This document shows, one piece after another, positions 21,619 through 38,682 of a stretch of 64,000 nucleotides of DNA. The number at the start of each line of letters is the position of its first letter. Within the stretch, counting starts at the first letter, position 1. A model generated the notes under the pieces. The model was not told the DNA's origin. It did no database searches and saw only the letters and a list, made by a program, of their open reading frames with translations. The stretch spans positions 62,001 through 126,000 of the IMG/VR virus record IMGVR_UViG_3300009093_000035; one strand, 5' to 3'. The translations under genes were made by a program, and so were the position numbers.

Positions 21619-21619
21619 C

Positions 21620-21943: not shown

Positions 21944-21952
21944 GGGCTCTCC

Positions 21953-24900
21953 TCAGGAGGGGTTCTGGACAGAGACGCGGAACGTCATCTGGATGTAGAG
22001 CAGCGGGAAGACCGGGACGTAGAAGGCGTTCACGAGAACCGCCGTCGGATCTTCCGGGTCGGTCGCCACGGTGATACCCGTGAAGCTCGTGATGATCTGT
22101 TCCTGGACCGCTCGCTTGAACATCTCGGAGAGACGTCCCTCGATCTGGCCGAGGATCTGCGGGAGGAACTTGACACCGATGAACGGGTCGAGTTCCGCTC
22201 GCGCGCGCTTCTGCATGTCGTCGGCGATCTGGATGACCGTCGGGATCCTCGACAGGATGTTCGACATGTCCGACGTGAGGCCGTGTCGGATCCGGAGGAA
22301 GGGAAGACGCTCCTCCAGGACCGTGACGCCGCGCTGAGCGACCTGGTTGGCCTGGACCGCGTCGAGACGCCGCGCGAGAGCCGTGAAGCCCGAGAGCTGG
22401 CGACCCGTCCACGGCGTGGCCGAGTCGATCGAGGGCGAGGTCGTGCTCGCCGCGACCGCAGCCGCGAGGTAGCGACCGTCCGAGAGGTACTGCTTCGAGT
22501 TCCCCAGGGCGTCGGTCAGCGAGAAGGTGACGATGTCCGGGTAGATGAACCGGACGCGGCTCGCGCCGGTCGCCTGAGCGATCGTCCCGGCCTGGATCGG
22601 CTGGGTGCCCGAGGCGTAGCCGAAGATCGCCGTCCGCTCCGCACGGTAGCGGATCGAGGACTGGACGTCGCAGTGGATGGCCGTCTGCTTCGCGAGGTTC
22701 GCCGTCGCCGGGGTGAGGAGGACGATCACGGTCGGGGAGATGTTCCCCGGCAGAGAATCGCCTTCGAGCGCCCGGAGAGCGTCGAGGTACGTCTGCTCGC
22801 TCGCCTGGGACGATCCCGGGGTCTTCTTGACCTGGTAGGTCGCGATCACCGAGGAACCGTTCAGGAACGAGAAGTAGGCCGCGAGGGAGAGCGGGTTGTC
22901 GGGGCTGACGTCACCGTACTCCGCCACGACGTCCGAGAGACGCGAGAAGAACTTCGGGGTGAAGTCCTGCTTCTCGAAGTTGTAGCTGACGTAGTAGACC
23001 GTTCCGATCGAGGGCTCGTCGCCCGTCTTCTTGAAGGTCTCGACGAAGGCCGAGTCGCCCACGACCACGCCGTTCGTGTTCGTGACGATCAGCTCGATAC
23101 CCGGGACCGCGAGGGTCGGGATGTTGCCGTCGGTGGTGAAGGTCTTGCTCGACCGGAAGGTGAGCGTCGCGAGGGCGCCAACCGGGTACGGGATCCCGCC
23201 GTCGCGCGGAAGGATCGTGAAGACCAATCCCGTCACGTCGTCGTAGTAGGTCTGACCCACCACGCCGTCCTGACCGACGCCGTTGTTGAAGACCGAGGTG
23301 TTGGCCGAACCCGAGCCCGAGGTCGGATCCGACGAGGTCACGAAGAACCCGTCGATCGCCGCCTCGCCCGAAGCCCCGTCCGCCGACGTGATCAGGAGCA
23401 TCGTCCCGGTCACGAGAGCGTTGTGGGACGTGGCGTCGGCGAAGTCGATCGAGGAACCGACTCCGAGCGTCTGGCTCTGGAAGTAGAGGTAGACGTTGTT
23501 CGTCGAGTCCTTCTGGATACCGGCGAGAGCGCGGCCCGCGAAGTAGTTCACGTCCGGGGTCGCGAAGGCGGTCATGAAGGTCACGAAGGCGCCAGACGCC
23601 CCCGCGTGGTTCATGAGCACCGAGCCCATCTGGAGCGCCGAGACCGACGTCGGAGCCGCCGAGCTGTCGGGGGTGAACCCGAGGGTGTCGTTCGCGCTTC
23701 CCGATCCGATCACGAGGGTCGAAGCCGGACCGACTCCGCCACCGGTGAGGCGAATCGAAGCGCCTTCCTGAAGGACTCCGACCGTCGCGGAAAGACCCGC
23801 CGCCACGATCGCGGCGTTGATCTGGCCGAGGACCGAGCCCGCGACCGTGACCGGCCCGAGAGCCGTATCCGTCCCGGGACCCGAGGCCGCGAAGACGCAG
23901 GTCACGAGACCGCCGCCCGCCGTGAAGGTCAGGACGTTGTTCGCGGGGTTGCTCGGATCCGACCCGTCGAAGAAGGTGACGTTCGGCTGACCGTCACGGC
24001 TGTCGCCGAACGTCGCCGCAGCGACCTGACCGCCCGACCAGCCCGTGAGGGCGAGAAGGGTGGGGGCCTTCACGTTCGCGCCGTAGGCCGCTTCCGCCGT
24101 GACTCCGTTGAGGAGACCGGACTTCACCGCGCCGGTTCCACCCTGGAGGGTGATTCCGGCCTGGGCGAGAGCGGAGTTGAAGGCGATCGAGTTCCCGCCG
24201 ATGAAGAGGCGGTTCCGGAGGATGATCCGGTCGTAGGGGAGGCGACCTGCCGTCGTCGTCACCGTGTAGCGACGAGCGATCGGGCCGTTGTAGACCTTGA
24301 CCTGGTCGCCGTTCGTCGCAGCGGCCGTCGAGAGACCGGCCAGGATCGCGAAGTCGCGAGCCGGAGTGGCGTTCGTGATGAACTCCAGGTAACCCGCAGC
24401 GTCGGCGCCCGCGAGCGTCGCCCCAGACCACGTCGCACCCGTGACGGTCGTCGTCGTGGTGATCGAGTTCGAGCCGAGGCCCTGGCTCTTCGCCGTGACT
24501 CGCATCGTCGTACCGGGGCCCTGAGCCGCCGAGACGACGGGGTTGAGCGTGGTCGAAGCCGCGTAGGTCGAGCCAGCGCCCGTTCCGAGGTTGATGGCGT
24601 TGATCAGGTTCGTGATCGAGGCCGCCGTCGACCCGCCGATCAGGACGTGTCCGTCCACGTCGGTGAGGACGGTCTGGAAGGTGTAGACCTTTCCGTTGAT
24701 GGTGACGGTCTGGGTATCCGTCGGCTGACCCGTGAAGGTCAGGAGACCCGTCGACCGAGCGATCGTGAGGGTGAACCGGATCTGACCCGAGGCGAGAGCC
24801 GAAGCCGTCACCGACCCGAGGAGACCGCCCGTGGCGTTGATCGTGGCCAGCTGGGTGTTGAGCTGGGCGACGAGAGCGCCTACCGAGGCGTAGGTGCCGG

Positions 24901-27259
24901 GGGTGAGGGTGACCGTCTGGATACCCGACGCGCCGGACACGCTTCCCGTGTAGTGGAGAGAGAGGCGGTCGTACTCGTTCGCCGCGACGGTGTACGCGGT
25001 GAACTGACCCGCTCCGTCGTAGCGGGACTCGTGACCCGCCGTGAGAACCGCCGCGTTGATCGCGGAGACCCAGGTAGCCGCCGTCGCCGATCCGACGGTT
25101 CCCGTCGAGACCGAGACCGGGACGCCGTCCACGACCATGTTGATCGTGTCGTCGACTCCGGAGGTGAGGCCGTAGGTGGTCTCACCCGTCGCCGGGTCGT
25201 ACTTGATCTCTTCGCCGAGAAGCGAGGCGAACGCGCCGGCTCGATTCCCGCCCGTCGGAGACGAGAGGTCGATACCAGCCGCGATACCCGTCTGGGCCGG
25301 AAGCCCGTCGATCGTGAGACGGAGGGCGTCGGAGATGTTGTCGATCGTGTAGTACGGCTGCGGGCCGAGGTTGGTGAACCGGGCCGGGGTCTCGTCGCTT
25401 CGAGCGAACTCGACCGTGACGGTCTCCTCGACGGGGACGCCGCCTTCGATCCGCGCGTCCGGGAAGAACTCCGAACCCGAGGGGAAGTTGATCTGGACCG
25501 TCGTGAGGTCAGAGCCCTTCCCCGTGAGGAACACGTCGAATAGCGAGGCTCCTGACCCGTTCACGAGGGAGTAGGTTCCGATCCCGCCCGCGCCCGCCGT
25601 CACGTTCGTGAGCGTGTAGGCGTGGCTCGAACCGATGTTCGCCTGGTCGACGAGGGTGTTGTAGTAGAAGGTCGCGTAGACCGAGGCGCCTTCCGGCACC
25701 GGGGACTTCAGCGTGATCGAGGAAGTCGTGTCGTCGACCTTCAGGACCGTGACCACCCCGCGAGCGAGAGCGTCCTGGACGCCGAAGCCCCAGTAAGCCT
25801 TGATCAGGTCCGGACGGGTCGTCGCGAGATCCGAACGGCCGTTCGAGACCGTGAGGAAGAGCGACTCACCGAGCGGGTTGCCGCGACCGTTGCCCGTCGT
25901 GGGCTGGAACGGAAGCTGGAAGACCGTCCGACTCTCGACCGCGACCGGGCCGGTGTTGTCCACCGTCGGGGTGCAGGAGGCCATGAAGACCTGGTTGTCG
26001 ACGAGCGTCGCCTGGATCTGGGACGTACCGAGCGTCACTCCGCCTTCGGTGTGGGTCGCGGGGGAAACGAGCGCCGCCGTACCCCAGACGATCACGTCAT
26101 CCTTCAGGACGTACGAGACGCCCTGGACGAAGGTGCCGGCCGTCGACCCGTCGGGGGTGAGACCAACCTGGGTGATCGCCGTGACGCCGATGTTGGCGAG
26201 GTAGTCGAACGTGTCCTGCCAGGTGTTGAAGTAGTAGCGGATCTTCACCGTCGAGGTCTTCGCCGGAGCGAAGGGGAGCGTCACGGCGCGAGCCGTTCCG
26301 TTCACAGCGCTCGGGATGACCTGGACTCCGTCCACCGTGACGACCACGTCCGCCGGGTTCGTCGTCGTGAGACCGCCGCCGTTCCCGTCCACGATCGGGC
26401 CGTTGAACACGTAGAAGGTACGGTTCCGCGACGTCGAGGCGTTCGGCACGAAGCCGAGCGTCGTATTCGCCGTCCCCGTTCCGATCACGATCGACTGGTC
26501 CGCCGAGAGGCGGAGGCAGACCTGACCGAGGTTGTTCACGAAGGTCGAAGCGACCAGCGAGCCGATCCCCGCAGTCCCGTTGATCGTGGCCGCCACGACC
26601 GCCGCCGACACGGACGGGGCCGACGAGGGCATCGTGACCGTGACGAAGGAGAGCCCGTCCACCGAGAAGGTGAACTGGTCGTTCGCGCCGAGGATGAAGG
26701 CGAAGTTCTGGCCGGCCTGGCCATCGATCACGGCCGCGTCCGAGGAGACCTGGTCCGAGACGTCGTCCGTCGTCAGGGTGTCGGTCCGGTCGAAGAAGTA
26801 GGTGCAGCGGACCGAGTCCGTCGGAAGCGGCGCCTCCGCGATCTCGACGATCCCCTTCGCCGCGTCGAGTCCGAGGACCACGACCGGGAAGTTGTTGATC
26901 AGGACCGAGACCGAACTCGTGTCGGTCGCGAGCGTCCCCGTCCCGTCGCCCGAAACGAGCGGAAGGTTGCGGACCTGGAACTTCGTGATCGTCCCGTCGA
27001 AGTCACCGAGGGTGACCAGGCCGCTCGGGGAAACGTTGAGAACCGCCCTTCCCGACTCGTCCTCTTCCGTGACCTGCTGGTCGATCGTCGAGGACGAGCC
27101 TCGGACCACCGGCAAGTTCTGACGAGACAGGATCTCCGTACCCGTTCCGACGAGAACGGTGATACGGGCGGGGACAGGCACCGGTGTGTTCGGGACCCCG
27201 AAGAACGTCTGGGTGTAGACGCCCGGGGGTGCATATCCGCCACGAAGAAGACTCGGCAT
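21953..27259 (-). CDS. Contractile tail sheath protein, unusually large (~1768 aa)
   Basis: N-terminal PPGVYT motif; C-terminal sheath domain (LAAAVAA ... RIRHGLT ... ADDMQKRARAELDPFIG ... VNAFYVPVFPL); long beta-rich insertion; followed by the tube gene. Confidence 0.88.
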   Translation of the reverse strand: MPSLLRGGYAPPGVYTQTFFGVPNTPVPVPARITVLVGTGTEILSRQNLPVVRGSSSTIDQQVTEEDESGRAVLNVSPSGLVTLGDFDGTITKFQVRNLPLVSGDGTGTLATDTSSVSVLINNFPVVVLGLDAAKGIVEIAEAPLPTDSVRCTYFFDRTDTLTTDDVSDQVSSDAAVIDGQAGQNFAFILGANDQFTFSVDGLSFVTVTMPSSAPSVSAAVVAATINGTAGIGSLVASTFVNNLGQVCLRLSADQSIVIGTGTANTTLGFVPNASTSRNRTFYVFNGPIVDGNGGGLTTTNPADVVVTVDGVQVIPSAVNGTARAVTLPFAPAKTSTVKIRYYFNTWQDTFDYLANIGVTAITQVGLTPDGSTAGTFVQGVSYVLKDDVIVWGTAALVSPATHTEGGVTLGTSQIQATLVDNQVFMASCTPTVDNTGPVAVESRTVFQLPFQPTTGNGRGNPLGESLFLTVSNGRSDLATTRPDLIKAYWGFGVQDALARGVVTVLKVDDTTSSITLKSPVPEGASVYATFYYNTLVDQANIGSSHAYTLTNVTAGAGGIGTYSLVNGSGASLFDVFLTGKGSDLTTVQINFPSGSEFFPDARIEGGVPVEETVTVEFARSDETPARFTNLGPQPYYTIDNISDALRLTIDGLPAQTGIAAGIDLSSPTGGNRAGAFASLLGEEIKYDPATGETTYGLTSGVDDTINMVVDGVPVSVSTGTVGSATAATWVSAINAAVLTAGHESRYDGAGQFTAYTVAANEYDRLSLHYTGSVSGASGIQTVTLTPGTYASVGALVAQLNTQLATINATGGLLGSVTASALASGQIRFTLTIARSTGLLTFTGQPTDTQTVTINGKVYTFQTVLTDVDGHVLIGGSTAASITNLINAINLGTGAGSTYAASTTLNPVVSAAQGPGTTMRVTAKSQGLGSNSITTTTTVTGATWSGATLAGADAAGYLEFITNATPARDFAILAGLSTAAATNGDQVKVYNGPIARRYTVTTTAGRLPYDRIILRNRLFIGGNSIAFNSALAQAGITLQGGTGAVKSGLLNGVTAEAAYGANVKAPTLLALTGWSGGQVAAATFGDSRDGQPNVTFFDGSDPSNPANNVLTFTAGGGLVTCVFAASGPGTDTALGPVTVAGSVLGQINAAIVAAGLSATVGVLQEGASIRLTGGGVGPASTLVIGSGSANDTLGFTPDSSAAPTSVSALQMGSVLMNHAGASGAFVTFMTAFATPDVNYFAGRALAGIQKDSTNNVYLYFQSQTLGVGSSIDFADATSHNALVTGTMLLITSADGASGEAAIDGFFVTSSDPTSGSGSANTSVFNNGVGQDGVVGQTYYDDVTGLVFTILPRDGGIPYPVGALATLTFRSSKTFTTDGNIPTLAVPGIELIVTNTNGVVVGDSAFVETFKKTGDEPSIGTVYYVSYNFEKQDFTPKFFSRLSDVVAEYGDVSPDNPLSLAAYFSFLNGSSVIATYQVKKTPGSSQASEQTYLDALRALEGDSLPGNISPTVIVLLTPATANLAKQTAIHCDVQSSIRYRAERTAIFGYASGTQPIQAGTIAQATGASRVRFIYPDIVTFSLTDALGNSKQYLSDGRYLAAAVAASTTSPSIDSATPWTGRQLSGFTALARRLDAVQANQVAQRGVTVLEERLPFLRIRHGLTSDMSNILSRIPTVIQIADDMQKRARAELDPFIGVKFLPQILGQIEGRLSEMFKRAVQEQIITSFTGITVATDPEDPTAVLVNAFYVPVFPLLYIQMTFRVSVQNPS

Positions 27260-27408
27260 GGTTCTCGCGCTCCTGAGTCTCGGGTTCAAACCGAGCTACC
27301 ACGGATGAATTCAACCTCTCCCGTCTATTGGAGAGGAAACGAAAAGCGCGAGAGATGGGGTACGTAGTTCGAGTAGGGTTTGGCCACGGCGTCCGAAGCG
27401 CCGGGAAA

Positions 27409-27876
27409 TCATGGGCGAAGGACGGCCTTCTTCTGGTGTTCGGATACCTGAGGAAACTTCTCCCGGAGCGCCTTCTCCATCTTGGAGTGGAACGAACGAG
27501 TTCGTTCCGAGGCGGCCCTCTGCTTGGGAGTCATGACTCCATAGGAGCCATCGATCTTCTTCGCGAGGTCGTATCCGGTCTTCCCGGACGCCTCGATCAC
27601 ATCCCTCTTCGCCTTCTGTCGAGAAGCGATGGTCTTCCACTTCGTCTTGGAGTCCTCGCCAACGATCCGATCGATCTGGTAGTCGTGAGACGAGATCCCC
27701 GACATGGGAGCCGAGAGACCCTCGGTCGCCACCGATGAAGTGACTGAGAACCCACGAGGCATCGTCTTCTCCGCCGGGGCTCCGCAAGACTCACACTTCG
27801 TCGAGTTGGTCGCACCCGCGACCCTCGCCGAGAAGTTCAGTCCGCAAGATCCACACTGGTATCGGAAGACTGGCAA
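27409..27876 (-). CDS. FmdB-like zinc-ribbon protein
   Basis: MPVFRYQCGSCG ... CESCG at the N-terminus, followed by a basic extension. Confidence 0.7.
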   Translation of the reverse strand: MPVFRYQCGSCGLNFSARVAGATNSTKCESCGAPAEKTMPRGFSVTSSVATEGLSAPMSGISSHDYQIDRIVGEDSKTKWKTIASRQKAKRDVIEASGKTGYDLAKKIDGSYGVMTPKQRAASERTRSFHSKMEKALREKFPQVSEHQKKAVLRP

Positions 27877-27923
27877 CCGGTTCTCCTATCCTTCGAGGGT
27901 AGAAATAGACGCGTCACCGCAGA

Positions 27924-29042
27924 TCATTTGATCTCTTCGAAGTCAGCCTTGCCGACGAACCAAGGATCTCGGAAGGGACTGAGGGCCAGATCCTTCGGAA
28001 CGTTCTTGATGCTCTCCTGGTAGGAGAAGATCCGAGAGACGATTGGGACGAAGAGGAACCAATCCGATTGGACTGTAACGGACATTGACGACCCGTAGAA
28101 GTAGTCGTCCCCGTTCTCGTCGTAGATCTCCTCGGTCTCTCCGCCCATGGAGACGTCCTGGATGTCGATCCCCTCTTCGATCAGATTCGGCCGAAGGATC
28201 GCCCAGAGGAACATGGCCGTACTGTCCGAGATCTCCGCCTGAGAGTTCACGTCCCGAGCGACGATGTCGATGTCGACCCCCAACTCCCACTTCCCGCCGT
28301 ACTCCAGGTACGCGGGCTCCCGGATCGCCGAGACGAGGATCGCCCAGCGATCTCCCTTCTTGTATCGATGCCCGAAGACCATGGTGACGCCCGGGATCGC
28401 CTTGTTCATCCCCGAGCGAGGGAGAACCTTCCAGGGTCCTGTGCTAACCCCCGCCGTCCGATAGTCGGCCGAGAGAGCCATGTTGTTTGCCAACGGCGTG
28501 TTAAGGAAGATCGTGGTCTGATCACTCCCCACCACGTAGTCGACCCCTGGCTTCAGTTCGCGGGCGCTGGGCAGCTCGTAGATCCGAAGACTCCCCTCGT
28601 AAGGGACGGCCTGGATCGAACCTTCCGAGTTCGTGGTCATCGTCACCCGCTCGTCTCGAACGTCGAGAAGAGGGTCGATGTAGAACTCATCCTCCGAAGT
28701 CATCTCGCAGTAGTAGACGCCCGGAGCTACGGGGAAGCGTCCCCCGTTGTCCTGGATCGCGATCGCATCCTCTCGAACCCACTCGACCGAAAGGCCCGGG
28801 TACCCGGGGATTCGGGCGAGGGTCACGTACGAGGCGACCGTACCCATGAAGTTGTCCGGAGAGAACTGAACCTTCGTCGCCTGTCCGGTCTTCAGGATGA
28901 TGCCGAACTGTGGGCGCTCTTCGAAGCTGTACTTGCCCTGGATGTTATCTACCAGGTCCTGATACTTCGGGTCGAGAGACCAGAAGGCTCGGAGTTCCTT
29001 GATGAACCGCCTGCGAGTCGCTTCGGTGAGATGGAAGTACAA
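27924..29042 (-). CDS. Neck / tail-completion-like virion protein (372 aa)
   Basis: Position upstream of the sheath; no diagnostic motif recognised. Confidence 0.45.
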   Translation of the reverse strand: MYFHLTEATRRRFIKELRAFWSLDPKYQDLVDNIQGKYSFEERPQFGIILKTGQATKVQFSPDNFMGTVASYVTLARIPGYPGLSVEWVREDAIAIQDNGGRFPVAPGVYYCEMTSEDEFYIDPLLDVRDERVTMTTNSEGSIQAVPYEGSLRIYELPSARELKPGVDYVVGSDQTTIFLNTPLANNMALSADYRTAGVSTGPWKVLPRSGMNKAIPGVTMVFGHRYKKGDRWAILVSAIREPAYLEYGGKWELGVDIDIVARDVNSQAEISDSTAMFLWAILRPNLIEEGIDIQDVSMGGETEEIYDENGDDYFYGSSMSVTVQSDWFLFVPIVSRIFSYQESIKNVPKDLALSPFRDPWFVGKADFEEIK

Positions 29043-29086
29043 AGGGTCCTCCCTTCTACCGAAGCAAAGACAGGCTATTCCCTAGG

Positions 29087-30115
29087 CTACTCGTCGTATT
29101 CCTGAAGGGCCTGGATGAGGAGCCCGTTCGCGACCGCGTTCAGCTGGTCCGTAGCGAGACGAACCTCGCTCACCTCGATCGGGAAGCGCTTCCGCTTCTT
29201 CTCGAAGACCGAGTTGAAGAACTCCAGGAAGCCCTCCGGCTTCGAGGTTCCGCCGGAGACGATGATGGGGATCGCCTTCGGGATCGCGAACTTCCCCTCG
29301 ATCGACTTGAACTGGAGGGCGATCTGGTCGAGGACGTACTCGACGAGGTTCTTGTAGTAGAAGGTGACCGCTTCCTGCTCCCGACCGACGGGCTTCCTCA
29401 GGTCGATCCCCTTCTCCTTCATGGCGCAGATCCGAGCCGCCGTTGATCCGATCGACTTCGCGGCGCCGTTGTCGATCCAATCGCCTCCGCGAGCGACCGA
29501 GAAGGAGAGACCCTCGACGGTAGTGACAGCCAACGAGACGTTCGTCATGCCGCTCCCGAACGAGAGAGCGATCCCGGAGAAGCCTTCCTTCGCGGTCTCG
29601 GCGTAGATGATCGCGAGGGCCTCGTTCCCGGCATGGGCCGTGTACCCGCACTCGGTGACGATCCGGTCGAAGACCCCCTTGTGGTACACGACATCGCGAC
29701 CGGGCTGATCGACGGGAGCCGCTGGGATCGAGAAGAAGCAGTGCTCCCCCTTCGCCTTCGGATCTCCGAGAACGTTCTTCACGAGAAGACCGAGGACCGA
29801 GAGCGAGTCGATCTCGGTCGAGGAAACGAGACCCCCCGAGAGCGGACGGCGAGCCTCCTTCCCGAAGAGATTCGCCATGTCGAGGGCCGCGTCCCCGAGA
29901 ACGAGGATCTCATCGTCCCTCTCGACGTACGAAACGTTCGAGAGCTTCAACATCTTCTTCGCGTCGGAGGGCATGTCGAGGAACGCGTCGCGCATCCGAG
30001 ACGTGTCGATTCCCTTCGCGCTCTTCCGAGCCGAAACGAGGTTCATCGTCCCGACGTCGAGACCGACCCCGAGGTACTGAGCCGTCTTCTCCGCTGCCGC
30101 CTGCTTCTCAGCCAT
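29087..30115 (-). CDS. Actin/Hsp70-fold ATPase (MreB/FtsA/EutJ-like), 342 aa
   Basis: Phosphate-1 GLDVGTMN, connect-1 NEALA, phosphate-2 LSFGSGMT, GGDWID, adenosine IIVSGGTS, connect-2 AVANG, all in the correct order and spacing. Confidence 0.85.
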   Translation of the reverse strand: MAEKQAAAEKTAQYLGVGLDVGTMNLVSARKSAKGIDTSRMRDAFLDMPSDAKKMLKLSNVSYVERDDEILVLGDAALDMANLFGKEARRPLSGGLVSSTEIDSLSVLGLLVKNVLGDPKAKGEHCFFSIPAAPVDQPGRDVVYHKGVFDRIVTECGYTAHAGNEALAIIYAETAKEGFSGIALSFGSGMTNVSLAVTTVEGLSFSVARGGDWIDNGAAKSIGSTAARICAMKEKGIDLRKPVGREQEAVTFYYKNLVEYVLDQIALQFKSIEGKFAIPKAIPIIVSGGTSKPEGFLEFFNSVFEKKRKRFPIEVSEVRLATDQLNAVANGLLIQALQEYDE

Positions 30116-30833
30116 GGTTCTTGTCCTTCTTCTTTCGGGCGTTCCGGAGGGCCGCTCCCGCTTCGTCTACGCTACCGGTCTCGGTGACCGCCTTGTTGGT
30201 CTGAATGTCCTGACTCCCGTCCGGAACAATGTTCGTGGGGATGAACATCTCGTCGGGGGGAGCGTCGAGTGGAGATCGAGAATCACGTTCCGTTGAGACC
30301 GTCACGACTCGATCGAACCGGACCTCCTTCAACGCCTCTTTCACCGCATCGGCTACGGCTGTGGCGATCTCCTCCGTGTTGACCTTCGTAGCCGGTACCA
30401 TCCCCTCGAAAGGCTTCAACTTCTCCGAGAGAACCCGCTCGAAGGACCTCAACTGCTCCCCGAGCTTCTGGACCTCAGTCGAAAGACTCGACACGATCTT
30501 GAGGACGAGCGTCTGATCGGTTGGAACCGGAGCGGGAGCTTCGGGTTGAGGCGGAGGAGGAAGGCCAGGGTGGACCGCCGCACGACTCGCTGCCCTCAGA
30601 TTCGGACTCATCCGAGCGGTTGAGACAGGTAGGGATTCCGGCTTGATGGTGCCCCTCATGATCTTCACCCCCACCACACCCTGAGACTTCAACGACTCCA
30701 GGTCCCTCGACTTCGAGATCGCTGAAAGGGTAGTTCGAAGCCGAGTCCCCTTCGCCATCCGTAGATCGAGGTCCAGGATGTGGGCGGAGTCGCCCAGACA
30801 CACCAGTTCTACTTCTTCGCCGGGGGGGATCAT
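30108..30833 (-). CDS. Hypothetical protein, overlapping the start of the actin-like gene
   Basis: 241-aa ORF overlapping both neighbours; Pro-rich linker and coiled-coil-like segment. Confidence 0.65.
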   Translation of the reverse strand: MIPPGEEVELVCLGDSAHILDLDLRMAKGTRLRTTLSAISKSRDLESLKSQGVVGVKIMRGTIKPESLPVSTARMSPNLRAASRAAVHPGLPPPPQPEAPAPVPTDQTLVLKIVSSLSTEVQKLGEQLRSFERVLSEKLKPFEGMVPATKVNTEEIATAVADAVKEALKEVRFDRVVTVSTERDSRSPLDAPPDEMFIPTNIVPDGSQDIQTNKAVTETGSVDEAGAALRNARKKKDKNHG

Positions 30834-31420
30834 TTCAGGGTTCCTTCCAAGATCCTACTGATCGACCGGTTCAGGAACTGATCCAAGCAATCCTTCTGAG
30901 CCCTCCGAAAGGCCCGCTCTATGAAGGTGTGCTTGGCGATTCCGGGGTGGATCCAGGCCTTGTCGGTAGTGAGAGGAGCGGTACGGATGACCACTTTACC
31001 GTCGTCCCCACGAAGAGGAACCTTGTAGACGCCTTGGGCTTGGGTAAGCCACTTCATCTTGTACGGGCCGTTCGTACCTTCTTGGATGAGTCGGATCCAC
31101 GGCCAGGTACAAACGATGTCAATCGTGTTGTCCTTGATCTGGTAGGAGAAGGACTTGAAGAAGTCGTCGGTGACGGGGACCTGACCGGTCTTCGCTGCGT
31201 CCTTCTTCGCTTCCTGACGGATGTACTTCAGAAGACAGCGCCCGAAGAACTGGAGGTCTTTCTTCGTGAGTACGGCTCCGACCTTCCGTTCGAGAGGGGA
31301 GATGTACCTCTTTCGGATCGGGTCGGTGCTGGCGTAGCGAGAGAACGGGGAAGCCGAGGGACTCGTCCCCCGTACCTTCCCGCTCATCTGTACAGGAGCG
31401 CCGGGAACGATGTTGGCCAT
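30830..31420 (-). CDS. Neck/head-completion-like protein (196 aa)
   Basis: Basic protein ending WIHPGIAKHTFIERAF, reminiscent of HK97 gp10-like / neck proteins; operon context. Confidence 0.45.
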   Translation of the reverse strand: MANIVPGAPVQMSGKVRGTSPSASPFSRYASTDPIRKRYISPLERKVGAVLTKKDLQFFGRCLLKYIRQEAKKDAAKTGQVPVTDDFFKSFSYQIKDNTIDIVCTWPWIRLIQEGTNGPYKMKWLTQAQGVYKVPLRGDDGKVVIRTAPLTTDKAWIHPGIAKHTFIERAFRRAQKDCLDQFLNRSISRILEGTLK

Positions 31421-31423
31421 GGG

Positions 31424-32797
31424 TTAGTAGTTCTGGTTTTCGCCAGTACCCGTACGCCAACGCTGCTGTACCGGACCCGGAACGTTGTCCTTGTTGGTCG
31501 CCTCGGGAAGATCTGCGTCCGGGGTAACCGGCCACGGCGGATCCGTACGAGCGTCGTAGGTCTCGCGGGGCGGGTTGTACGTGTACCGGGTCTGGGGCCA
31601 CGGAAGGTTCGGCGAAGCGATCGTTCCGTCGATCGGGACCTCGTATCGAATGTCCTGAGAGTCGAGGTACTGAATGGTGAAGTGCTGCTGCAGGACGTTA
31701 CCACGATTGGTGGGACGTCGGACCGGCCCGAGCGAGTACCGGTCGTTGTTCTGTTTGATCACGAAGTCGCGCTGGGAAACGATCGGAGTGAAGGTCATGA
31801 ACACGTCGTAGGAGTGTTCTTTCCGCCGTCCGTTCGGTCCCTGAGAGATCTTCCTCTCCGCGTCGTCCGGAGCCATGATGATGTCGTAGGGGCCTTCGAA
31901 GCCTCCCACGAATCCGGTCCCGTAGCAGATCTTGCATCGGCTCGACGGTTGCTTCGAGTAGGCCCGGACGCGCGCATCCAGCTCCAACCTACACTCGCAC
32001 CGACGACCCGCCACCTTCCTCACAAAGAGCTTCACCCGCTCCCCGCCCTCGGTGAGGATCCAGTTGTTCCGGCGAATCGCCTCGCGCCAGATGTAGTCGA
32101 GCTGTTCGATCTGCATGTCCGACGCAGGCATCGTAACATTCAGAGGAGTCTCGACTAGACCTCCTGGAGCGTCATCACTCTCCGCAACCGTAGTGACGCG
32201 GTAGAAAGACTTCTTGTCCACCCCCGGCTGGACGAGGTTCTTCAGGGTGTAGTAGGTCACGAGGACTTCGTCGTCCGGCCCCGTAGGCAACGGGGCGAAG
32301 GCGAAGCGATCGTTCCTGGGGTCGATGTCCCCGGCGTCTCCTAGCGTGATCTCGTTCGAGGGACCGAACACCTCGAAGATACGGGCCGGGACGCCATTGA
32401 TCGTGACGATCACGTCTTCGAGGGAATTGGCCGGGGTCCCTTGGGTCCTCGGCTTGTACATGGGGTAACGAGTCCGTAGCGTCCACCGACGCAGGTTCGG
32501 GGCGTTCCCTCGCGACTGCCATCCCGTATCCCAGGGAATGATCTCCTGGTTCACGAGGGCGACGTCGGTGTAGTCTCGGAAGAAGGTTCCCCCGACCGGA
32601 AACGAGTTCACTCGACGGAAAGGACCGCGGTCGGAGGCGTCCGAACGATAGACGTTCACACCTACGACCGCGTACGAAGAGTTCCCTCCGAGAAGAGAGG
32701 GATCATCCCACCGAATGTCGAAGACACCCTTGTCAAACGGGCTCACCACCATGACGTTCATGGGGGGGAGGGGATACGTGATAGGGTCCCAGACCAT
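31424..32797 (-). CDS. Neck / head-closure protein with N-terminal FN3-like domain
   Basis: ORF 31424..32818 (likely start 32797 after AAGGGA). DIRWDDP ... VGVNVYRS is FN3-like; C-terminal CxC ... CxxCxGTGF-G-GF pattern seen in phage neck proteins. Confidence 0.55.
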   Translation of the reverse strand: MVWDPITYPLPPMNVMVVSPFDKGVFDIRWDDPSLLGGNSSYAVVGVNVYRSDASDRGPFRRVNSFPVGGTFFRDYTDVALVNQEIIPWDTGWQSRGNAPNLRRWTLRTRYPMYKPRTQGTPANSLEDVIVTINGVPARIFEVFGPSNEITLGDAGDIDPRNDRFAFAPLPTGPDDEVLVTYYTLKNLVQPGVDKKSFYRVTTVAESDDAPGGLVETPLNVTMPASDMQIEQLDYIWREAIRRNNWILTEGGERVKLFVRKVAGRRCECRLELDARVRAYSKQPSSRCKICYGTGFVGGFEGPYDIIMAPDDAERKISQGPNGRRKEHSYDVFMTFTPIVSQRDFVIKQNNDRYSLGPVRRPTNRGNVLQQHFTIQYLDSQDIRYEVPIDGTIASPNLPWPQTRYTYNPPRETYDARTDPPWPVTPDADLPEATNKDNVPGPVQQRWRTGTGENQNY

Positions 32798-32825
32798 GGC
32801 TTCCCTTTCGGGAAGCATAGGTTGG

Positions 32826-33161
32826 TTAGTGGGTCGGGGCTGTCTGGAGGTTCTTCGACGGCAGGATCACCACCGTCCCGTCCGGGGTCATCTGCCAGGG
32901 TGTCCCCGGCGCGATCCCGAGACGCGAAGCCGCAGCGTTCATGAGGCCCTGAGCCTTCTCCTGAACGTCGCTGAGAGACGTGAGGAGACCGGCCTTCCGG
33001 ACTTCCATCTGACCGATGGTCTGGACCAGCTCCTGGGCCTGGCGGTGGAGTCGGGTGAGGTTCTCCACCTCTTCCGGAAGAAGCTTCTGAGCTTCTGCGG
33101 CGGCCTTCGTCGTGTCGGCCTTCGTCATGTCTTCGGCGGTATTGGGGTTCTCGTTGCTCAT
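32826..33161 (-). CDS. Small coiled-coil hypothetical protein (~111 aa)
   Basis: MSNENPNTAEDM... start at 33161 within ORF 32826..33452; heptad-like helix. Confidence 0.6.
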   Translation of the reverse strand: MSNENPNTAEDMTKADTTKAAAEAQKLLPEEVENLTRLHRQAQELVQTIGQMEVRKAGLLTSLSDVQEKAQGLMNAAASRLGIAPGTPWQMTPDGTVVILPSKNLQTAPTH

Positions 33162-33201
33162 TCTCGTTCCCTTTCCTAGGAGCGAAACTCTACCGACCAG
33201 A

Positions 33202-34683
33202 TCAGCCGTTCGGAAGGACCGGCAGGCCCTTCTTCGGCTTCGCCGGAACCGGAGGCGAGTAGACCCCGATCTTGAAGTCAGGCATACGGAGCGCCTTCGC
33301 AGAGCCGTACAACTCCGAGCCGCACCGCGCCTTCCCCGGCTCTTCCTTGTTGTCATCCGAACAGGAGAGACAACCCGTCGGCGGGCACTCCTCGACCTCG
33401 GTGAACGGAGCGCCCGGGGTCTTCCGAGTGAACATCGGAACGCGATGCCCATGGCACTGGTCGGCGGTTAGGAACTCCTTCCCGATCGATACGCCGGTCT
33501 TGTTGATAACCTCTCCCGCCTCATTCCGGACCATCTTGTACTCGTAGCACGTCGCGTACGTGAGACCGAGTCGCTTCGCCGCCGCCTGATAGAGACGATG
33601 ACCGACGATCCGATACTCCTCGGCGATCGTCTTCTGGCCCCCGATGTTCTCCGTGAACAGGCTCTCGAAGACCTTCCCGCGCTCGTCCCCGAAGCGAGAC
33701 TGAATACGCTTCACCATCGCCGGAGCCCAAGAGTAACCGGCCTCGACGAACTTCACGATGACGTGGTCGGCCCCGGCCGCCCTCAGCATCTCGAAGATCT
33801 CGATCACACCCGTATGGTCCACGACACCGGGAAGGATCGGATTGACCTGGATGGAGACGTAGATTCCGCGCTTCTTCAGCTCGCGGATGTCGTCCATGTG
33901 CTCTTCGAGAGAAGCCGCCCCCGGAGAGAGCTTCTTCCAATCCTTCGGGTTCGCCGTGTTGATCGACTTCTGGGCGTAGCTGTACGGGTTCTTCTGGAGC
34001 ATATCGATCGCCCAGCCCGGATACCGGAGACGCGAAAGGAAGAAGATCGGAAGACCCGCGTCCACGAACGCCTGAGCGCCATGCTGGGTGTTGTGGTAGT
34101 AGTTCTCCAAGGGGAGGAACGGATCCGTGAAGCTGGAGAAGTAGCCGGCCGCCGAGGTCTGCATCTTCCCCAGGGCCTTCTTAACCTGGTCCCCGTAGCC
34201 CATCGGGACGCTCACGAGCCCGGAGCCTCGGTAGCCCTTGAAACCGGAGTTGATGTAGCAGAAGGCGCAGCCCACCGTACAGAAGCCTCCGTACGGCTGG
34301 GTGAGGATCGCGTCCGTGAAGCACGGACGGTCTCGAACCCCCTTCGGTTCGGTCTTCGCCTTGTACCAACCCTGGAGCGGGCGCATCGCGTCGATACGGA
34401 TGTGTGGGATCGGATCGAGGAAGACCTGAAGGACGTGCTTGTCTTCGTCCTTCGCGCCCCGGACCATCCCGATCCTCATCTTCCGGGACCGTAGGCCAGT
34501 CTCGGGCTCGACCTCGATGTCCCCCGCTACGTCCTTCGGCTCGGGACGCATGAAGAAGTCGTAGGCCTTCCTAGTGCTCTCCGCGACCCCGCCGGTAGCC
34601 AGCGCCACCTCGTCGGCGACCGCCTCTTCAGGGGTCTCTTCGTCGGCGTTGTTCTCATCCAGCCACGTCAGGATCTGGTCCAT
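33202..34683 (-). CDS. Radical SAM enzyme (SPL-like fold), 493 aa
   Basis: QPYGGFCTVGCAFCY (CxxxCxxC), SFTDPF, VQVNPILPG-type motifs; extra C-terminal Cys cluster (QCHG ... ECPPTGCLSC ... RCG). Confidence 0.88.
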   Translation of the reverse strand: MDQILTWLDENNADEETPEEAVADEVALATGGVAESTRKAYDFFMRPEPKDVAGDIEVEPETGLRSRKMRIGMVRGAKDEDKHVLQVFLDPIPHIRIDAMRPLQGWYKAKTEPKGVRDRPCFTDAILTQPYGGFCTVGCAFCYINSGFKGYRGSGLVSVPMGYGDQVKKALGKMQTSAAGYFSSFTDPFLPLENYYHNTQHGAQAFVDAGLPIFFLSRLRYPGWAIDMLQKNPYSYAQKSINTANPKDWKKLSPGAASLEEHMDDIRELKKRGIYVSIQVNPILPGVVDHTGVIEIFEMLRAAGADHVIVKFVEAGYSWAPAMVKRIQSRFGDERGKVFESLFTENIGGQKTIAEEYRIVGHRLYQAAAKRLGLTYATCYEYKMVRNEAGEVINKTGVSIGKEFLTADQCHGHRVPMFTRKTPGAPFTEVEECPPTGCLSCSDDNKEEPGKARCGSELYGSAKALRMPDFKIGVYSPPVPAKPKKGLPVLPNG

Positions 34684-34718
34684 CGAGTTCTCCTAGAGCG
34701 ACACCACGAATAGGGCCT

Positions 34719-35657
34719 TCATTGACCACACAGAAACACACGACCTTCGTCTCGGTAGATGGTCTTATGACCTTGACGTACCCCGGTCCAGTCGTTGAAC
34801 TCCCCCAACCACTCTTTGGGGAAGACTCGCGCTCGCGCTTTCCAGAAGGGGGACGTCTCGACCACATCACTCTGAAACGGAATTCCAGCTTGTCGAGCCG
34901 GAAGATGGGTCATCTGAAGATCGATGTCATGACCACAATAGTAGTGGCCCTTGCACAGAGAGTTGAAGTCGCACAAGGCCGTCTCCAACTGATCGAGCCC
35001 GGAGAAGGCTACCCCGGCCGTCCGAGAATCTTCGAGGAGAGCCCTCTGGAGCGAGAGATTTGTCGCGCACTCTTTCCAGGACTGTCCGGTGAGACGAACC
35101 ATCCCAGGGATCGGACCCGCGGTCTCCGACCCACCTCCGACCCCTAGGTCTGAGGCCGTGATCGGAAAGTCGTGGACGTGAGCGAGTAGGTCTGCGAGCT
35201 TGTACGAGGACCAGGGACCCGCGTGGGGGATCTTCTGGAACCCCTCGCGAAGCGAGTCCCACCCTTCCGGTCCGCCGGCCTTCGTCAGCCCTTCCAACCA
35301 AGAGGAGAGGTTCCCTCCCGAGGCCTCCAGAACCTTCTCCAGATGAGCCAGAGATAGGAGGTTGCCACGGAAACCTCAACGCTCTGTCCCCGTGGAGAGT
35401 CCTTGAACCTTCTCAGGAGACGGCAACGCCGGGTCTGGGTACAAGTCCCAAACCCGGCTCGCCGAGCCCAAAGAGTACCACGTCACGTAGAGGAGCGTCC
35501 GCCAGAGAGACCTCTCTTTGTCGAGGCCTTCGGCTTGGTAGATCTCCTTCAGCAGCGGGTACGTCGGATCGAGATCTCCTGAGGAGAGCTGGCCGTTCGC
35601 GAAGATACAGAAATCCGCGAAGAGCTGCTTCGCCTCAGGAGCTATCGCTTCCGTCAT
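34719..35657 (-). pseudogene. Amino-acid:DNA transferase (ADDT / aGPT-Pplase2 family) interrupted by one in-frame TGA at 35376-35378
   Basis: ORFs 35376..35657 and 34719..35297 share a frame with no other stop between them. Combined they read GDLDPTY ... WRTLLY ... TGTER*GFRG ... GPWSSYKLADLL ... GP ... LETALCDF ... GHYYCGHDID. Confidence 0.8.
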
Positions 35658-35667
35658 CCAGCGTACG

Positions 35668-38136: not shown

Positions 38137-38199
38137 GAGGAAGAGATCTCCTGGTGAGAGATCTCTTTACGCCTCAACCAACTTGGTAGCCCACCCGAT

Positions 38200-38679: not shown

Positions 38680-38682
38680 CGC

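What the first reader, a model, noticed from the sequence alone, without database searches (positions are those of the whole stretch)
29087..30833. Phage-encoded actin-fold ATPase embedded in the neck/tail morphogenesis operon
Seen directly: the actin-superfamily motifs are all present, but the phosphate-2 Asp position reads Ser (LSFGSG rather than D-x-G-x-G). The gene overlaps a 241-aa Pro/coiled-coil partner upstream and is flanked by neck-like genes. Established: phage cytoskeletal proteins are known mainly as tubulins (PhuZ/TubZ) and a few Alp actins linked to DNA positioning. Inference: an actin homologue co-transcribed with late virion genes may position or transport capsids, organise assembly sites, or act as an assembly chaperone, with the upstream protein as adaptor.
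Basis: partly seen in the sequence, partly recalled or inferred. Interest (0 to 1): 0.75.

Follow-up and report, generated by a model that had tools for sequence, protein, structure and literature searches.

The report
Huge-phage actin gene with adaptor partner
A giant bacteriophage carries a well-conserved relative of the archaeal cytoskeletal protein volactin, paired with a small adaptor-like protein and placed next to its tail-terminator and tail-sheath genes, which suggests that some tubulin-less giant phages use their own actin filaments during infection.

Summary
ORF 29087-30115(-) encodes a 342-aa actin-fold protein. It matches Pfam Volactin (PF25216) at 244 bits over its full length. 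Its AlphaFold model (pLDDT 94.8) matches the Haloferax volcanii volactin model at TM 0.91. The phosphate-2 Asp is Ser (LSFGSG). This is a subfamily hallmark (228 of 232 domains), not an accident. The residue aligns with MamK D161, whose mutation kills ATPase activity and filament dynamics.

The window lies in a 248-kb fragment of a roughly 470-kb phage. The gene overlaps by 8 nt a 241-aa partner that carries two conserved C-terminal short motifs (E-M-F-I-P and A-L-K-K-x-R-K-K). This pair recurs in every phage lineage examined.

In one large clade the pair sits in a fixed order: 464-aa gene, 196-aa gene, partner, actin, tail terminator (fold Z 11-14), Zn-ribbon, tail sheath. The actin is the most conserved gene of this module in most comparisons.

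Phage copies do not nest inside the cellular (mostly Planctomycetota) clade, and inteins have invaded the nucleotide site repeatedly. None of six related phage records, one of them a complete genome, encodes tubulin.

Best reading (about 0.4): a filament-plus-adaptor system that positions virion-assembly intermediates. DNA positioning and a chaperone role remain live rivals. I found no published description.

The parts
29087..30115 (-). Volactin-family actin homologue, 342 aa
   Evidence: Pfam PF25216 at 244 bits, full length. AF2 model pLDDT 94.8, pTM 0.92. TM 0.91 and 37% identity to the H. volcanii Volactin model D4GU28. Z 29 to the MamK filament, 27.6 to BeeR, 26 to MreB.
29549..29566 (-). 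Phosphate-2 motif LSFGSG, with Ser185 in place of the canonical Asp
   Evidence: Translation. S185 aligns with MamK D161. Ser occurs in 228 of 232 family domains. Homologues carry inteins at four or more sites in this hairpin and the following GGDWID motif.
30108..30833 (-). Partner or adaptor candidate, 241 aa: N-terminal domain of about 55 aa, Pro-rich linker, helix-prone region, two C-terminal short motifs
   Evidence: 8-nt overlap with the actin start. An orphan family with no Pfam, PHROG or PDB match. It sits upstream of the actin gene in all ten loci with upstream sequence (adjacent in eight; a small ORF intervenes in L012 and L014) and again in L096, L098 and L003.
30222..30251 (-). Conserved partner motif E-M-F-I-P-T-N-I-V-P
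   Evidence: Translation. P199 is invariant; F197, I198 and I202 are nearly invariant in A5, although overall identity is only 18-26%. Variants are EEMFIP in L096, EGEFIPSIY in L098 and VWAIPEF in L003.
30126..30164 (-). Conserved basic C-terminal helix motif of the partner (A-L-R-N-A-R-K-K-K)
   Evidence: Translation. L229 is invariant and R233 nearly invariant in A5.
27924..29042 (-). Tail terminator (tail completion or 'gateway') protein, 372 aa
   Evidence: AF2 model pLDDT 76. VIA-align gives Z 14.4 to the phage 812 neck chain, 13.6 to an E217 neck-complex chain (8fvh_M), 13.3 to T5 p142 terminator and 11.5 to lambda gpU. More than 25 neck or terminator entries score above Z 10, then scores drop to about 5. 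Foldseek and BFVD return 'tail completion' and 'neck terminator gp12-like'. A strong GGAGG ribosome-binding site precedes the TTG start.
27409..27876 (-). Zn-ribbon protein, 155 aa, conserved in the module
   Evidence: Pfam Zn_ribbon_8 at the cut-off. Homologues lie at the same position in L002, L004, L011, L014-L017 and L096.
21953..27289 (-). Giant tail-sheath-like protein, 1778 aa
   Evidence: The nearest ESM-Atlas clusters to the C-terminal 479 aa carry Phage_sheath_1, Phage_sheath_1C or DUF2586, with scores 0.90-0.93. This is a lead, not a test. It is syntenic in all module loci.
30830..31420 (-). 196-aa module protein of unknown role
   Evidence: 4-nt overlap with the partner gene. Homologues in L002, L004, L005, L015 and L016. 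No Pfam, PHROG or PDB match. A resemblance to HK97 gp10-type neck proteins is from memory only.
31424..32818 (-). 464-aa module protein with an invariant CxC...CxxC motif
   Evidence: Syntenic and 38-70% identical across module loci. Invariant C274, C295 and C298, and near-invariant C276. Only a weak structural lead to the T4 neck protein.

Best explanation
The 342-aa protein is a volactin-family bacterial actin. With the 241-aa protein encoded just upstream it forms a two-part phage cytoskeletal system.

Proposed mechanism, all of it inferred. The actin polymerises on ATP. The partner binds the polymer through its conserved C-terminal motifs (acidic-F-I-P and the basic L-K-K-type helix). The partner uses its N-terminal domain to hold a cargo. 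Because the pair sits in a fixed order beside the tail-terminator and sheath genes in a large huge-phage clade that lacks tubulin, the most likely cargo is a virion-assembly intermediate: a finished tail, a neck, or a filled head. The system would then position or bring together these very large, slowly diffusing assemblies, much as PhuZ tubulin does for capsids in nucleus-forming phages.

Ser replaces the phosphate-2 Asp, the residue whose loss makes MamK filaments static. The filaments may therefore turn over slowly and act more as a track or scaffold than as a dynamically unstable pusher.

Shown: family membership, fold, motif state, the conserved gene pair, synteny, terminator identity, and phylogenetic separation from cellular copies. 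Inferred: polymerisation, partner binding, cargo, and timing.
For: (1) Identity. PF25216 at 244 bits. TM 0.91 to the volactin model. Volactin forms dynamic filaments in vivo (PMC10869688). The best solved matches are filament formers: MamK filament Z 29.1, BeeR 27.6, MreB about 26.

(2) Catalytic set. D20, G22, T23, E165 (equivalent to MamK E143), G187, G189, D212, D215, G288, G289 and G331 are invariant in all 17 module copies.

(3) Adaptor-like partner. Its body is poorly conserved (18-26% identity), but it keeps two C-terminal short motifs across all lineages, including L096, L098 and L003. The two genes overlap by 8 nt.

(4) Synteny. The order 464 aa, (196 aa), partner, actin, terminator, Zn-ribbon, sheath holds in the loci long enough to show it among L002, L004-L017 and L096, down to 41% actin identity. 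The terminator fold scores Z 11-14 and there is a sheath lead.

(5) Conservation. The actin is the most conserved module protein in eight of nine pairwise comparisons. In L007, for example, it is 53.5% identical, against 45.1% for the 464-aa protein, 33.6% for the terminator and 41.7% for the sheath.

(6) Inteins. They have invaded at least four sites in the phosphate-2 hairpin and GGDWID, as is typical of conserved nucleotide-binding sites of important phage genes.

(7) Phylogeny. Phage copies lie outside the cellular clade, which has 98% SH-aLRT support. The window sits in a 5-row phage clade with 95% support. Cellular loci hold none of the module genes.

(8) Copy number. There is one volactin gene and no tubulin in the window's record and in five related records, including a complete 393-kb genome with terminal repeats.

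(9) No centromere-like repeat array lies near the pair, and the genes are packed with gaps of 47 nt or less from the 464-aa gene through the Zn-ribbon gene (119 nt before the sheath gene).
Against: There are no experimental data on any member of the Ser subfamily. Polymerisation, ATPase activity and partner binding are all unshown.

The residue at the S185 position is essential for ATPase activity and dynamics in MamK (D161A; PMC5059902). H. volcanii volactin keeps Asp there, so its dynamic behaviour cannot simply be transferred.

Gene order in phages is only circumstantial evidence of function. Expression timing is unknown, and the promoter and terminator scans were uninformative.

The partner-actin pair also occurs in L098 and L003, where no neck or tail gene was detectable nearby.

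Many cellular family members are fused to ParB-type HTH or HU-like DNA-binding domains, which points to DNA cargo elsewhere in the family.

The fold of the partner's N-terminal domain and its cargo are unknown. The 464-aa and 196-aa neighbours are unidentified.

DnaK also scores Z 24.8, so the fold alone does not exclude a non-polymer ATPase.
Confidence: 0.4

Rival explanations
1. Phage-DNA or replication-compartment positioning. The pair would be a type-II-partition-like or AlpC-like system in which the partner tethers phage DNA, or a replication body, to the filament. This would keep a roughly 470-kb genome centred or segregated during a long infection or a carrier state.
For: The actin-plus-small-adaptor layout resembles ParM/ParR and AlpC/AlpA. 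Known phage and prophage actins act on DNA (PMC4446434, listed). Cellular family members are fused to ParB HTH domains (P0153, P0170) and to an HU-like domain (P0249, judged by eye). The pair also occurs outside any recognisable neck-tail context in L098 and L003.
Against: The partner shows no RHH or HTH signature in Pfam, PHROG or PDB profile searches. No iterated centromere-like repeats lie near the pair, and there is no intergenic space for them. Synteny with the terminator and sheath genes is strict across a deep clade. The adaptor is encoded upstream, not downstream as in parMRC (that comparison is from memory).
Confidence: 0.22
2. Non-polymerising actin-fold ATPase that acts as an assembly chaperone or scaffold for neck-tail completion, by analogy with Hsp70/DnaK-type or PilM/FtsA-type scaffolds. 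The partner would be a co-chaperone or client adaptor.
For: The gene lies directly upstream of the tail-terminator gene. The fold also matches DnaK at Z 24.8 and FtsA at Z 25.2. The phosphate-2 Ser suggests altered hydrolysis.
Against: The protein has no substrate-binding or extra domain; its 342 aa equal a bare MreB/MamK-size actin core. The nearest relatives by sequence and fold are all filament formers. EutJ ranks far lower (rank 47). Actin-level sequence conservation exceeding that of the structural proteins fits a polymer with many contacts.
Confidence: 0.15
3. Host take-over. The phage filament reshapes or enlarges the host cell, or interferes with a host volactin-type cytoskeleton, to make room for very large virions.
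For: H. volcanii volactin affects cell shape (PMC10869688). The family is widespread in Planctomycetota, so some hosts may own a related cytoskeleton.
Against: The host is unknown. Phage and cellular clades are well separated, with at most 46% identity. A dedicated phage-specific partner and the fixed place in the tail module are not expected for a host-mimic.
Confidence: 0.08
4. A recently captured host gene with no phage-specific role (a passenger or auxiliary gene).
For: Huge phages carry many host-like genes. Cellular homologues exist.
Against: The nearest cellular copies are only 41-46% identical. Phage copies lie outside the cellular clade. Synteny is conserved down to 41% identity. Each related genome has a single copy. 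There are 2,315 close and distant homologues, and the best 120 (all at least 67% identical) include many on contigs of 100-470 kb.
Confidence: 0.03

Closest known systems
Volactin (VolA, HVO_2015) of Haloferax volcanii; Pfam PF25216
   Same: Same Pfam family (244 bits). Near-identical predicted fold (TM 0.91, rmsd 1.7 A, 37% identity over 331 residues). Same size and four-subdomain actin core.
   Different: VolA is a cellular archaeal protein involved in the rod-to-disk shape change, and it keeps the canonical phosphate-2 Asp (G-V-D-F-G-A-G-T; supplementary Fig. 8b of PMC10869688). The phage protein has Ser, is viral, has a dedicated upstream partner and sits in a tail module.
MamK with its adaptor MamJ (magnetosome chain positioning)
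   Same: Closest solved structure by sequence profile (E 1.5e-13) and by fold (Z 29.1 to the filament form). It is an actin filament that moves or positions a large cargo through an acidic, repetitive adaptor.
   Different: Only about 20% identity, and the window protein has no MreB/MamK-type Pfam hit. MamK has D161 where the phage protein has S185, and D161A gives static filaments. The cargo is a membrane organelle.
ParMRC type II plasmid partition, and the prophage AlpC/AlpA system of Corynebacterium CGP3
   Same: An actin-like ATPase plus a small adaptor encoded side by side. These are the precedents for actins encoded by mobile elements and prophages (PMC4446434, listed).
   Different: Those adaptors bind DNA at repeated centromere or origin sites. 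Here no DNA-binding domain and no repeats were found, and the context is tail genes. ParM and AlpC belong to other actin families.
PhuZ/TubZ tubulin cytoskeleton of nucleus-forming (Chimalliviridae) jumbo phages
   Same: A phage-encoded cytomotive filament in phages with very large genomes. It is the functional analogue I propose: positioning or trafficking during virion production.
   Different: PhuZ has a tubulin fold, not an actin fold. No tubulin gene is present in this record or in five related records. PhuZ genes are not embedded in the tail module (from memory).
Saltatorellin, the MamK-like actin of Saltatorellota (Planctomycetota-related)
   Same: A bacterial actin that branches near MamK, comes from the planctomycete lineage and forms filaments on heterologous expression (bioRxiv 10.1101/817700). 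It may be the same cellular family I find across Planctomycetota.
   Different: I could not test identity of the families because I held no saltatorellin sequence. It is cellular, not viral.
FtsZ C-terminal peptide binding FtsA, and WH2 motifs binding actin
   Same: Short conserved peptides at the end of a disordered linker that dock onto an actin-fold protein. The partner's acidic-F-I-P motif and basic L-K-K-type helix look like this kind of element.
   Different: The resemblance is recalled from memory and is compositional only. There is no homology, and binding was not tested.

Membership tests
Volactin family (Pfam PF25216) | Full-length match to the family HMM above the gathering score | tested here: met
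   244.2 bits against a cut-off of 35; residues 17-336 on profile positions 3-321 of 321; confirmed on the genome record.
Volactin family (Pfam PF25216) | Fold of H. volcanii volactin (four-subdomain actin core) | tested here: met
   Model pLDDT 94.8. TM 0.91/0.90, rmsd 1.7 A and 37% identity to AFDB D4GU28 Volactin. The next hits (MreBH, MreB, salactin, MamK) have TM 0.66-0.74.
Volactin family (Pfam PF25216) | Canonical phosphate-2 D-x-G-x-G-T, as in H. volcanii volactin | tested here: not met
   The window protein has L-S-F-G-S-G-M-T-N. H. volcanii has G-V-D-F-G-A-G-T. Ser is the norm in the phage and Planctomycetota subfamily, at 228 of 232 domains. This marks a distinct subfamily rather than exclusion from the Pfam family.
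Volactin family (Pfam PF25216) | Dynamic filament formation in vivo | not testable with these tools
   Shown only for H. volcanii VolA-GFP (PMC10869688).
Actin/Hsp70/sugar-kinase ATPase superfamily | Phosphate-1 DxG, connect-1 catalytic Glu, adenosine GG and connect-2 Gly | tested here: met
   D20, G22, T23, E165, G288, G289 and G331 are invariant in all 17 module copies and in at least 94% of 232 family domains. E165 aligns with MamK E143.
MreB/Mbl (PF06723) | Match to the MreB_Mbl HMM | tested here: not met
   No PF06723 hit for the window protein at E <= 0.01. There is structural similarity only: Z about 26 at 15-17% identity.
Type II (ParMRC-like) partition system | Adaptor with a DNA-binding (RHH or HTH) domain | tested here: inconclusive
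   The partner and its alignment A5 have no Pfam, PHROG or PDB-profile match.
Type II (ParMRC-like) partition system | Centromere of iterated repeats next to the operon | tested here: not met
   Only short two-copy matches of the kind expected by chance, and no arrays, in 20000-40000 and 27000-34000. Intergenic gaps are 47 nt or less from the 464-aa gene through the Zn-ribbon gene.
PhuZ/TubZ phage tubulins | Tubulin/FtsZ GTPase fold | tested here: not met
   The protein has an actin fold. No PF00091 match occurs in the window's record or in five related phage records. The comparison is functional only.
Tail terminator proteins (lambda gpU, T5 p142, T4 gp15 class), applied to the 372-aa neighbour | Terminator fold | tested here: met
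   Z 14.4 (phage 812 neck), 13.3 (T5 p142), 11.5 (lambda gpU). More than 25 terminator or neck entries score above Z 10, then scores drop to about 5. Foldseek gives E 1e-8 at probability 1.00. BFVD returns 'tail completion' and 'neck terminator gp12-like'. There is no sequence-level match.

The most novel reading that the evidence does not exclude
Tubulin-less huge phages run an actin-based intracellular logistics system. A slow-hydrolysing, Ser-type volactin filament would, through a dedicated adaptor with short filament-binding peptides, capture tails, necks or filled heads and bring them together or array them. This would be a second, independently evolved phage cytoskeleton alongside PhuZ. 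It would be the first actin dedicated to virion morphogenesis, and it is conserved across hundreds of uncultured phage lineages.
Probability: 0.3. Interest if true: 0.85.

Novelty: new variant of a known kind. Interest (0 to 1): 0.7.

Why it matters
Phage-encoded cytoskeletons are so far known as tubulins (PhuZ/TubZ) and a few actins that handle DNA. This finding adds a large and diverse viral branch of the volactin family. A whole-library search found 1,048 clusters at 50% identity, and in the tree most rows outside the cellular clade look viral. Each phage copy examined comes with its own adaptor-like partner, and the actin is often more conserved than the structural proteins around it.

In one deep clade of 250-490-kb phages the pair is fixed between neck-region and tail genes. 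If it moves or arranges virion parts, that would show that giant phages face, and solve, an intracellular transport problem with actin. It would also give a simple two-protein actin-adaptor pair for biochemical study.

The natural Asp-to-Ser change falls at the residue that controls MamK dynamics. That makes the family a ready test of how actin-fold hydrolysis tunes filament behaviour.

The same analysis shows that the family is widespread in Planctomycetota, often fused to DNA-binding or kinase domains. I found no description of that either.

Tried and rejected
Searches that led nowhere:
- Pfam and PHROG scans of 28 further window ORFs gave no structural annotations.
- Profile searches of the terminator, 196-aa, 464-aa and partner alignments against PDB sequences found nothing significant.
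- A Pfam scan of the members of the terminator alignment found nothing.
- Terminase (PF03237), HK97 capsid (PF05065) and T4 portal (PF07230) models do not ring anywhere in the 248-kb record. The head genes could therefore not be placed relative to the module.
- Sigma-70 promoter and intrinsic-terminator scans were at or below chance, so no operon boundaries can be claimed.
- No tRNA and no Rfam family occurs in the window.
- PHROG scans of the neighbours in L098 and L003 gave nothing.
- The partner-family search was limited by low-complexity words and returned only 14 hits.

- A broad alignment was too diverse for the search for related loci. A narrower one worked.
I rebuilt the alignment without that row.

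Readings considered and rejected:
- Membership of MreB, EutJ, PilM or ParM: no family hits and a far better volactin match.
- Recent host acquisition: contradicted by the tree and the synteny.
- That the Ser is a sequencing or lineage quirk: it is present in 228 of 232 domains.
- That H. volcanii volactin shares the Ser: it has Asp.
Full report
WHAT IS THERE

The window is bases 62001-126000 of a 248,579-bp IMG/VR virus record that CheckV rates 56% complete. GC content is about 62% throughout. The exact protein also lies on a 472,929-bp contig, so the phage genome is probably about 470 kb.

On the minus strand, genes are tightly packed in this order:
- 464 aa, 31424-32818
- 196 aa, 30830-31420
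- 241 aa, 30108-30833
- 342 aa, 29087-30115
- 372 aa, 27924-29042
- 155 aa, 27409-27876
- 1778 aa, 21953-27289

The 241-aa and 342-aa genes overlap by 8 nt (ATGGCTGA). The 196-aa and 241-aa genes overlap by 4 nt. The 372-aa gene starts 44 nt after the actin stop and is preceded by a GGAGG ribosome-binding site.

THE ACTIN

The 342-aa protein matches Pfam PF25216 (Volactin) end to end, at 244 bits against a cut-off of 35. It has no other Pfam hit and no PHROG hit.

With a 44-sequence alignment, AlphaFold2 gives a model with pLDDT 94.8 and pTM 0.92. Its best match among reviewed UniProt models is H. volcanii volactin D4GU28: TM 0.91, rmsd 1.7 A, 37% identity over 331 residues. MreB, salactin and MamK follow at TM 0.66-0.74. 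Among solved structures the best are the MamK filament (Z 29.1), BeeR (27.6) and MreB (about 26). DnaK still reaches Z 24.8, so the fold alone does not prove polymerisation.

A profile of the family finds MamK first in the PDB (E 1.5e-13). That alignment places the window's E165 on MamK E143 and its S185 on MamK D161.

THE SER AT PHOSPHATE 2

Across 232 family domains the position is Ser in 228 and Asp in 2. The domains comprise 17 phage-module copies, 2 other phage copies, 96 from cellular loci and 117 cluster representatives. The local signature is S-[F/C/Y]-G-x-G-M-x-N.

The founding member differs. Supplementary Fig. 8b of Schiller et al. gives G-V-D-F-G-A-G-T for H. volcanii volactin. The phage and planctomycete proteins are therefore a Ser subfamily of PF25216.

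In MamK, D161A abolishes ATPase-dependent dynamics and gives stabilised, static filaments (PMC5059902). By inference only, Ser-type volactins may hydrolyse slowly or by a different route. The behaviour of H. volcanii volactin cannot simply be carried over.

HOW WIDESPREAD AND HOW OLD

The word-indexed search returns 2,315 homologues. The best 120 are all at least 67% identical, are unnamed or 'hypothetical', and include many on contigs of 100-470 kb. The exhaustive search of 50%-identity representatives finds 1,048 clusters at E <= 1e-3 and 321 at E <= 1e-30. Only 2 of 50,697 GenBank phage records carry the gene, both uncultured huge phages: LR745208.1 (485 kb, 69% identity) and LR756511.1 (595 kb, 32% identity).

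In species-representative prokaryote genomes at least 522 loci encode a relative. Almost all are Planctomycetota at 40-46% identity, with a few Omnitrophota, Anaerolineae, Aerophobota and one Thermoplasmatales MAG. The two best 'bacterial' hits, a Legionellales MAG contig and a Methylobacter MAG contig, carry the whole phage module and are probably phage contigs binned into MAGs.

A maximum-likelihood tree of 170 domains puts nearly all cellular loci, 32 of 34, in one clade with 98% SH-aLRT support. That clade holds no phage-module sequence. The window falls in a 5-row phage clade with 95% support, inside a 20-row, mostly phage-module group with 92% support. Cellular loci contain none of the phage module genes.

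THE PARTNER

An alignment of ten partners is only 18-26% identical to the window's copy. It nevertheless keeps four elements:
- an N-terminal domain of about 55 aa
- a Pro-rich linker
- the motif [D/E]-[D/E]-M-F-I-P-S-x-I-V-P
- a C-terminal helix ending A-L-K-K-x-R-K-K

In the window the last two lie at 30222-30251 and 30126-30164. The same two motifs are present in L096, at 41% actin identity. L098, at 36%, has E-G-E-F-I-P-S-I-Y followed by L-S-K-N-L-K. The 76-aa upstream protein of LR756511.1, at 32%, has a shortened form, V-W-A-I-P-E-F followed by K-F-G-K-K-A.

The conserved unit is therefore the partner-actin pair. The partner has no Pfam, PHROG or PDB relative. Conserved terminal peptides on an otherwise fast-evolving, partly disordered protein next to an actin gene are what one expects of a filament adaptor. 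Binding itself is inferred.

THE NEIGHBOURS

The 372-aa protein has no sequence-level annotation. Its model (pLDDT 76) matches tail terminators and neck-complex chains. Scores are Z 14.4 to the phage 812 neck, 13.6 to an E217 neck-complex chain, 13.3 to T5 p142 and 11.5 to lambda gpU. More than 25 such entries score above Z 10, after which scores fall to about 5. Foldseek on the PDB and BFVD agrees.

The nearest Atlas clusters to the C-terminal 479 residues of the 1778-aa protein carry tail-sheath families, with scores 0.90-0.93. This is a lead. The 155-aa protein is a Zn_ribbon_8 protein. The 464-aa protein has an invariant CxC...CxxC motif and only a weak structural lead to the T4 neck protein. 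The 196-aa protein is unidentified.

Upstream lie a radical-SAM protein (phrog_9252, 649 bits), a partial amino-acid:DNA-transferase match and a vWA protein. The tail genes therefore abut DNA-modification genes.

SYNTENY

The order 464 aa, (196 aa), partner, actin, (zero to two small or mobile ORFs), terminator, Zn-ribbon, sheath holds in LR745208.1, in twelve IMG/VR loci, in the two mis-binned MAG contigs and in L096, wherever the contig is long enough to show it. In eight of nine pairwise comparisons the actin is the most conserved protein. In the ninth, LR745208.1, it is narrowly second: 69.3% against 70.1% for the 464-aa protein. Two examples:
- L007: actin 53.5%, 464-aa protein 45.1%, terminator 33.6%, sheath 41.7%
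- L014: actin 51.2%, 464-aa protein 38.5%, terminator 31.7%, sheath 41.3%

In L098 and LR756511.1 no module gene was detectable near the pair. These lineages are very divergent, so this is absence of evidence rather than evidence of absence.

INTEINS

Many homologues are about 700 aa long because an intein interrupts the actin. These carry Intein_splicing plus HNH or LAGLIDADG domains. The insertions use at least four different sites: S|C-G-x-G-M, S-x-G|S-G-M, G-M-(T-N)|C, and R-G|C-G-D-W-I-D. All lie in the phosphate-2 hairpin or the following GGDWID motif. Repeated independent invasion of one nucleotide-binding loop points to a site that cannot change, in a gene the phages cannot easily lose.

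OTHER CYTOSKELETON

No tubulin/FtsZ domain is found in the window's record. None is found in five related records either, including a complete 393-kb genome with terminal repeats. Each of the six carries exactly one volactin gene.

MECHANISM

I commit to a filament-plus-adaptor system whose cargo is a virion-assembly intermediate (confidence about 0.4). The reasons are as follows:
- Every close structural and sequence relative is a filament former.
- The catalytic set other than the phosphate-2 Asp is intact.
- The adaptor-like partner is universal among the phage lineages examined.
- The pair has a fixed position beside the terminator and sheath genes in a deep clade.
- The sequence is more conserved than the structural proteins around it.
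- Tubulin is absent.
- No centromere-like repeats lie nearby.

The rivals are DNA or replication-body positioning (0.22), a non-polymer assembly chaperone (0.15), host-shape manipulation (0.08) and a passenger gene (0.03). The DNA rival is supported by ParB-HTH and HU-like fusions in cellular relatives. Nothing about timing, polymerisation, binding or cargo is shown.

KNOWN OR NEW

The literature library holds 17 papers that mention volactin, none about viruses. Jumbo-phage reviews and the huge-phage survey mention tubulin but no phage actin. Targeted searches found only DNA-handling phage actins such as AlpC and ParM-like plasmid-prophage systems.

The Saltatorellota 'saltatorellin' may belong to the cellular branch; I could not test this. 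I classify the finding as a new variant of a known kind. The protein family is known. The viral Ser-type branch with its own adaptor, and its linkage to tail genes, appear to be undescribed.

Noticed in passing
Homologues P0121, P0123, P0124, P0125, P0129, P0132, P0149, P0160, P0163, P0168, P0213, P0237, P0263 (equivalent to window residues 185-212, about nt 29480-29563): Inteins with HNH or LAGLIDADG endonuclease domains interrupt the phage volactin gene at four or more distinct sites. All lie in the phosphate-2 hairpin or the GGDWID motif.
   Followed up: yes
Loci L018-L095 (genome contigs); proteins P0138, P0153, P0170, P0172, P0249: The Ser-type volactin family is widespread in Planctomycetota MAGs, with at least 522 confirmed loci. 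17 of 79 loci hold two adjacent paralogues. Fusions occur to ParB-type HTH domains, an HU-like domain (judged by eye), a Wzz/GNVR/ParA-type kinase module and long coiled-coil N-termini. I found no description of this. It may overlap with 'saltatorellin'.
   Followed up: partly
L016 (PBLX01000019.1, 'Legionellales' MAG) and L017 (DATBQC010000391.1, 'Methylobacter' MAG): Both 18-kb contigs carry the core of the phage module: the 464-aa gene, partner, actin, terminator, Zn-ribbon and sheath. They are most likely huge-phage contigs binned into bacterial MAGs, or at best weak host hints.
   Followed up: partly
window 27409-27876(-); P0217 N-terminus; H. volcanii HVO_2014: Zinc-ribbon proteins recur next to volactin-family genes in three contexts. 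A Zn_ribbon_8 gene is conserved in the phage module. A CxC...CxxC ribbon is fused to an acidic, probably haloarchaeal, homologue. A CPxCG zinc-finger gene lies next to volA in H. volcanii. This may be coincidence.
   Followed up: no
window 34719-35297(-) and 35376-35657(-): The 192-aa ORF matches only the C-terminal part of the amino-acid:DNA-transferase family PF18724 (profile positions 131-230 of 232). A 93-aa ORF lies just upstream on the same strand, separated by a stop codon. This may be a split or frameshifted DNA-hypermodification gene. It sits beside a radical-SAM gene (33202-34683; phrog_9252 at 649 bits) and a vWA gene (35668-38136).
   Followed up: partly
L008 6900-7676, L009 2235-3011, L010 6132-6908: A 258-aa ORF lies between the actin and terminator genes in three related phage loci. 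Its N-terminus looks like a GIY-YIG homing endonuclease, judged by eye only. It is another sign of mobile-element traffic around this gene.
   Followed up: no
window 21953-27289(-): The sheath-like protein is 1778 aa long, far longer than usual sheath proteins. It has about 1,300 residues of Thr/Ser/Gly/Ala-rich sequence ahead of the sheath-like C-terminus.
   Followed up: no
window 31424-32818(-): The 464-aa module protein keeps an invariant Cys cluster (C274, C276, C295, C298) across ten phage homologues, which suggests a structural zinc site in a virion-module protein.
   Followed up: no
window 38200-40492(-): Four consecutive small ORFs (159, 146, 200 and 232 aa) all hit the same short stretch of L015 (about 2151-2255). 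They therefore share an N-terminal segment and look like a small paralogue family.
   Followed up: no
window 43540-44658(-) and 50532-51482(-): An RNA ligase (PF09414 plus a PHA02142 OB domain) and a two-domain PLD-like protein are encoded further along the same strand.
   Followed up: no
L099 (GCA_015231715.1 contig JADGBB010000041.1) 1877-3951: A bacterial genome carries two tandem volactin paralogues (336 and 344 aa) in an ordinary cellular context that includes a Na/H exchanger, a CBS protein, an Fe-ADH and YoeB/YefM.
   Followed up: no
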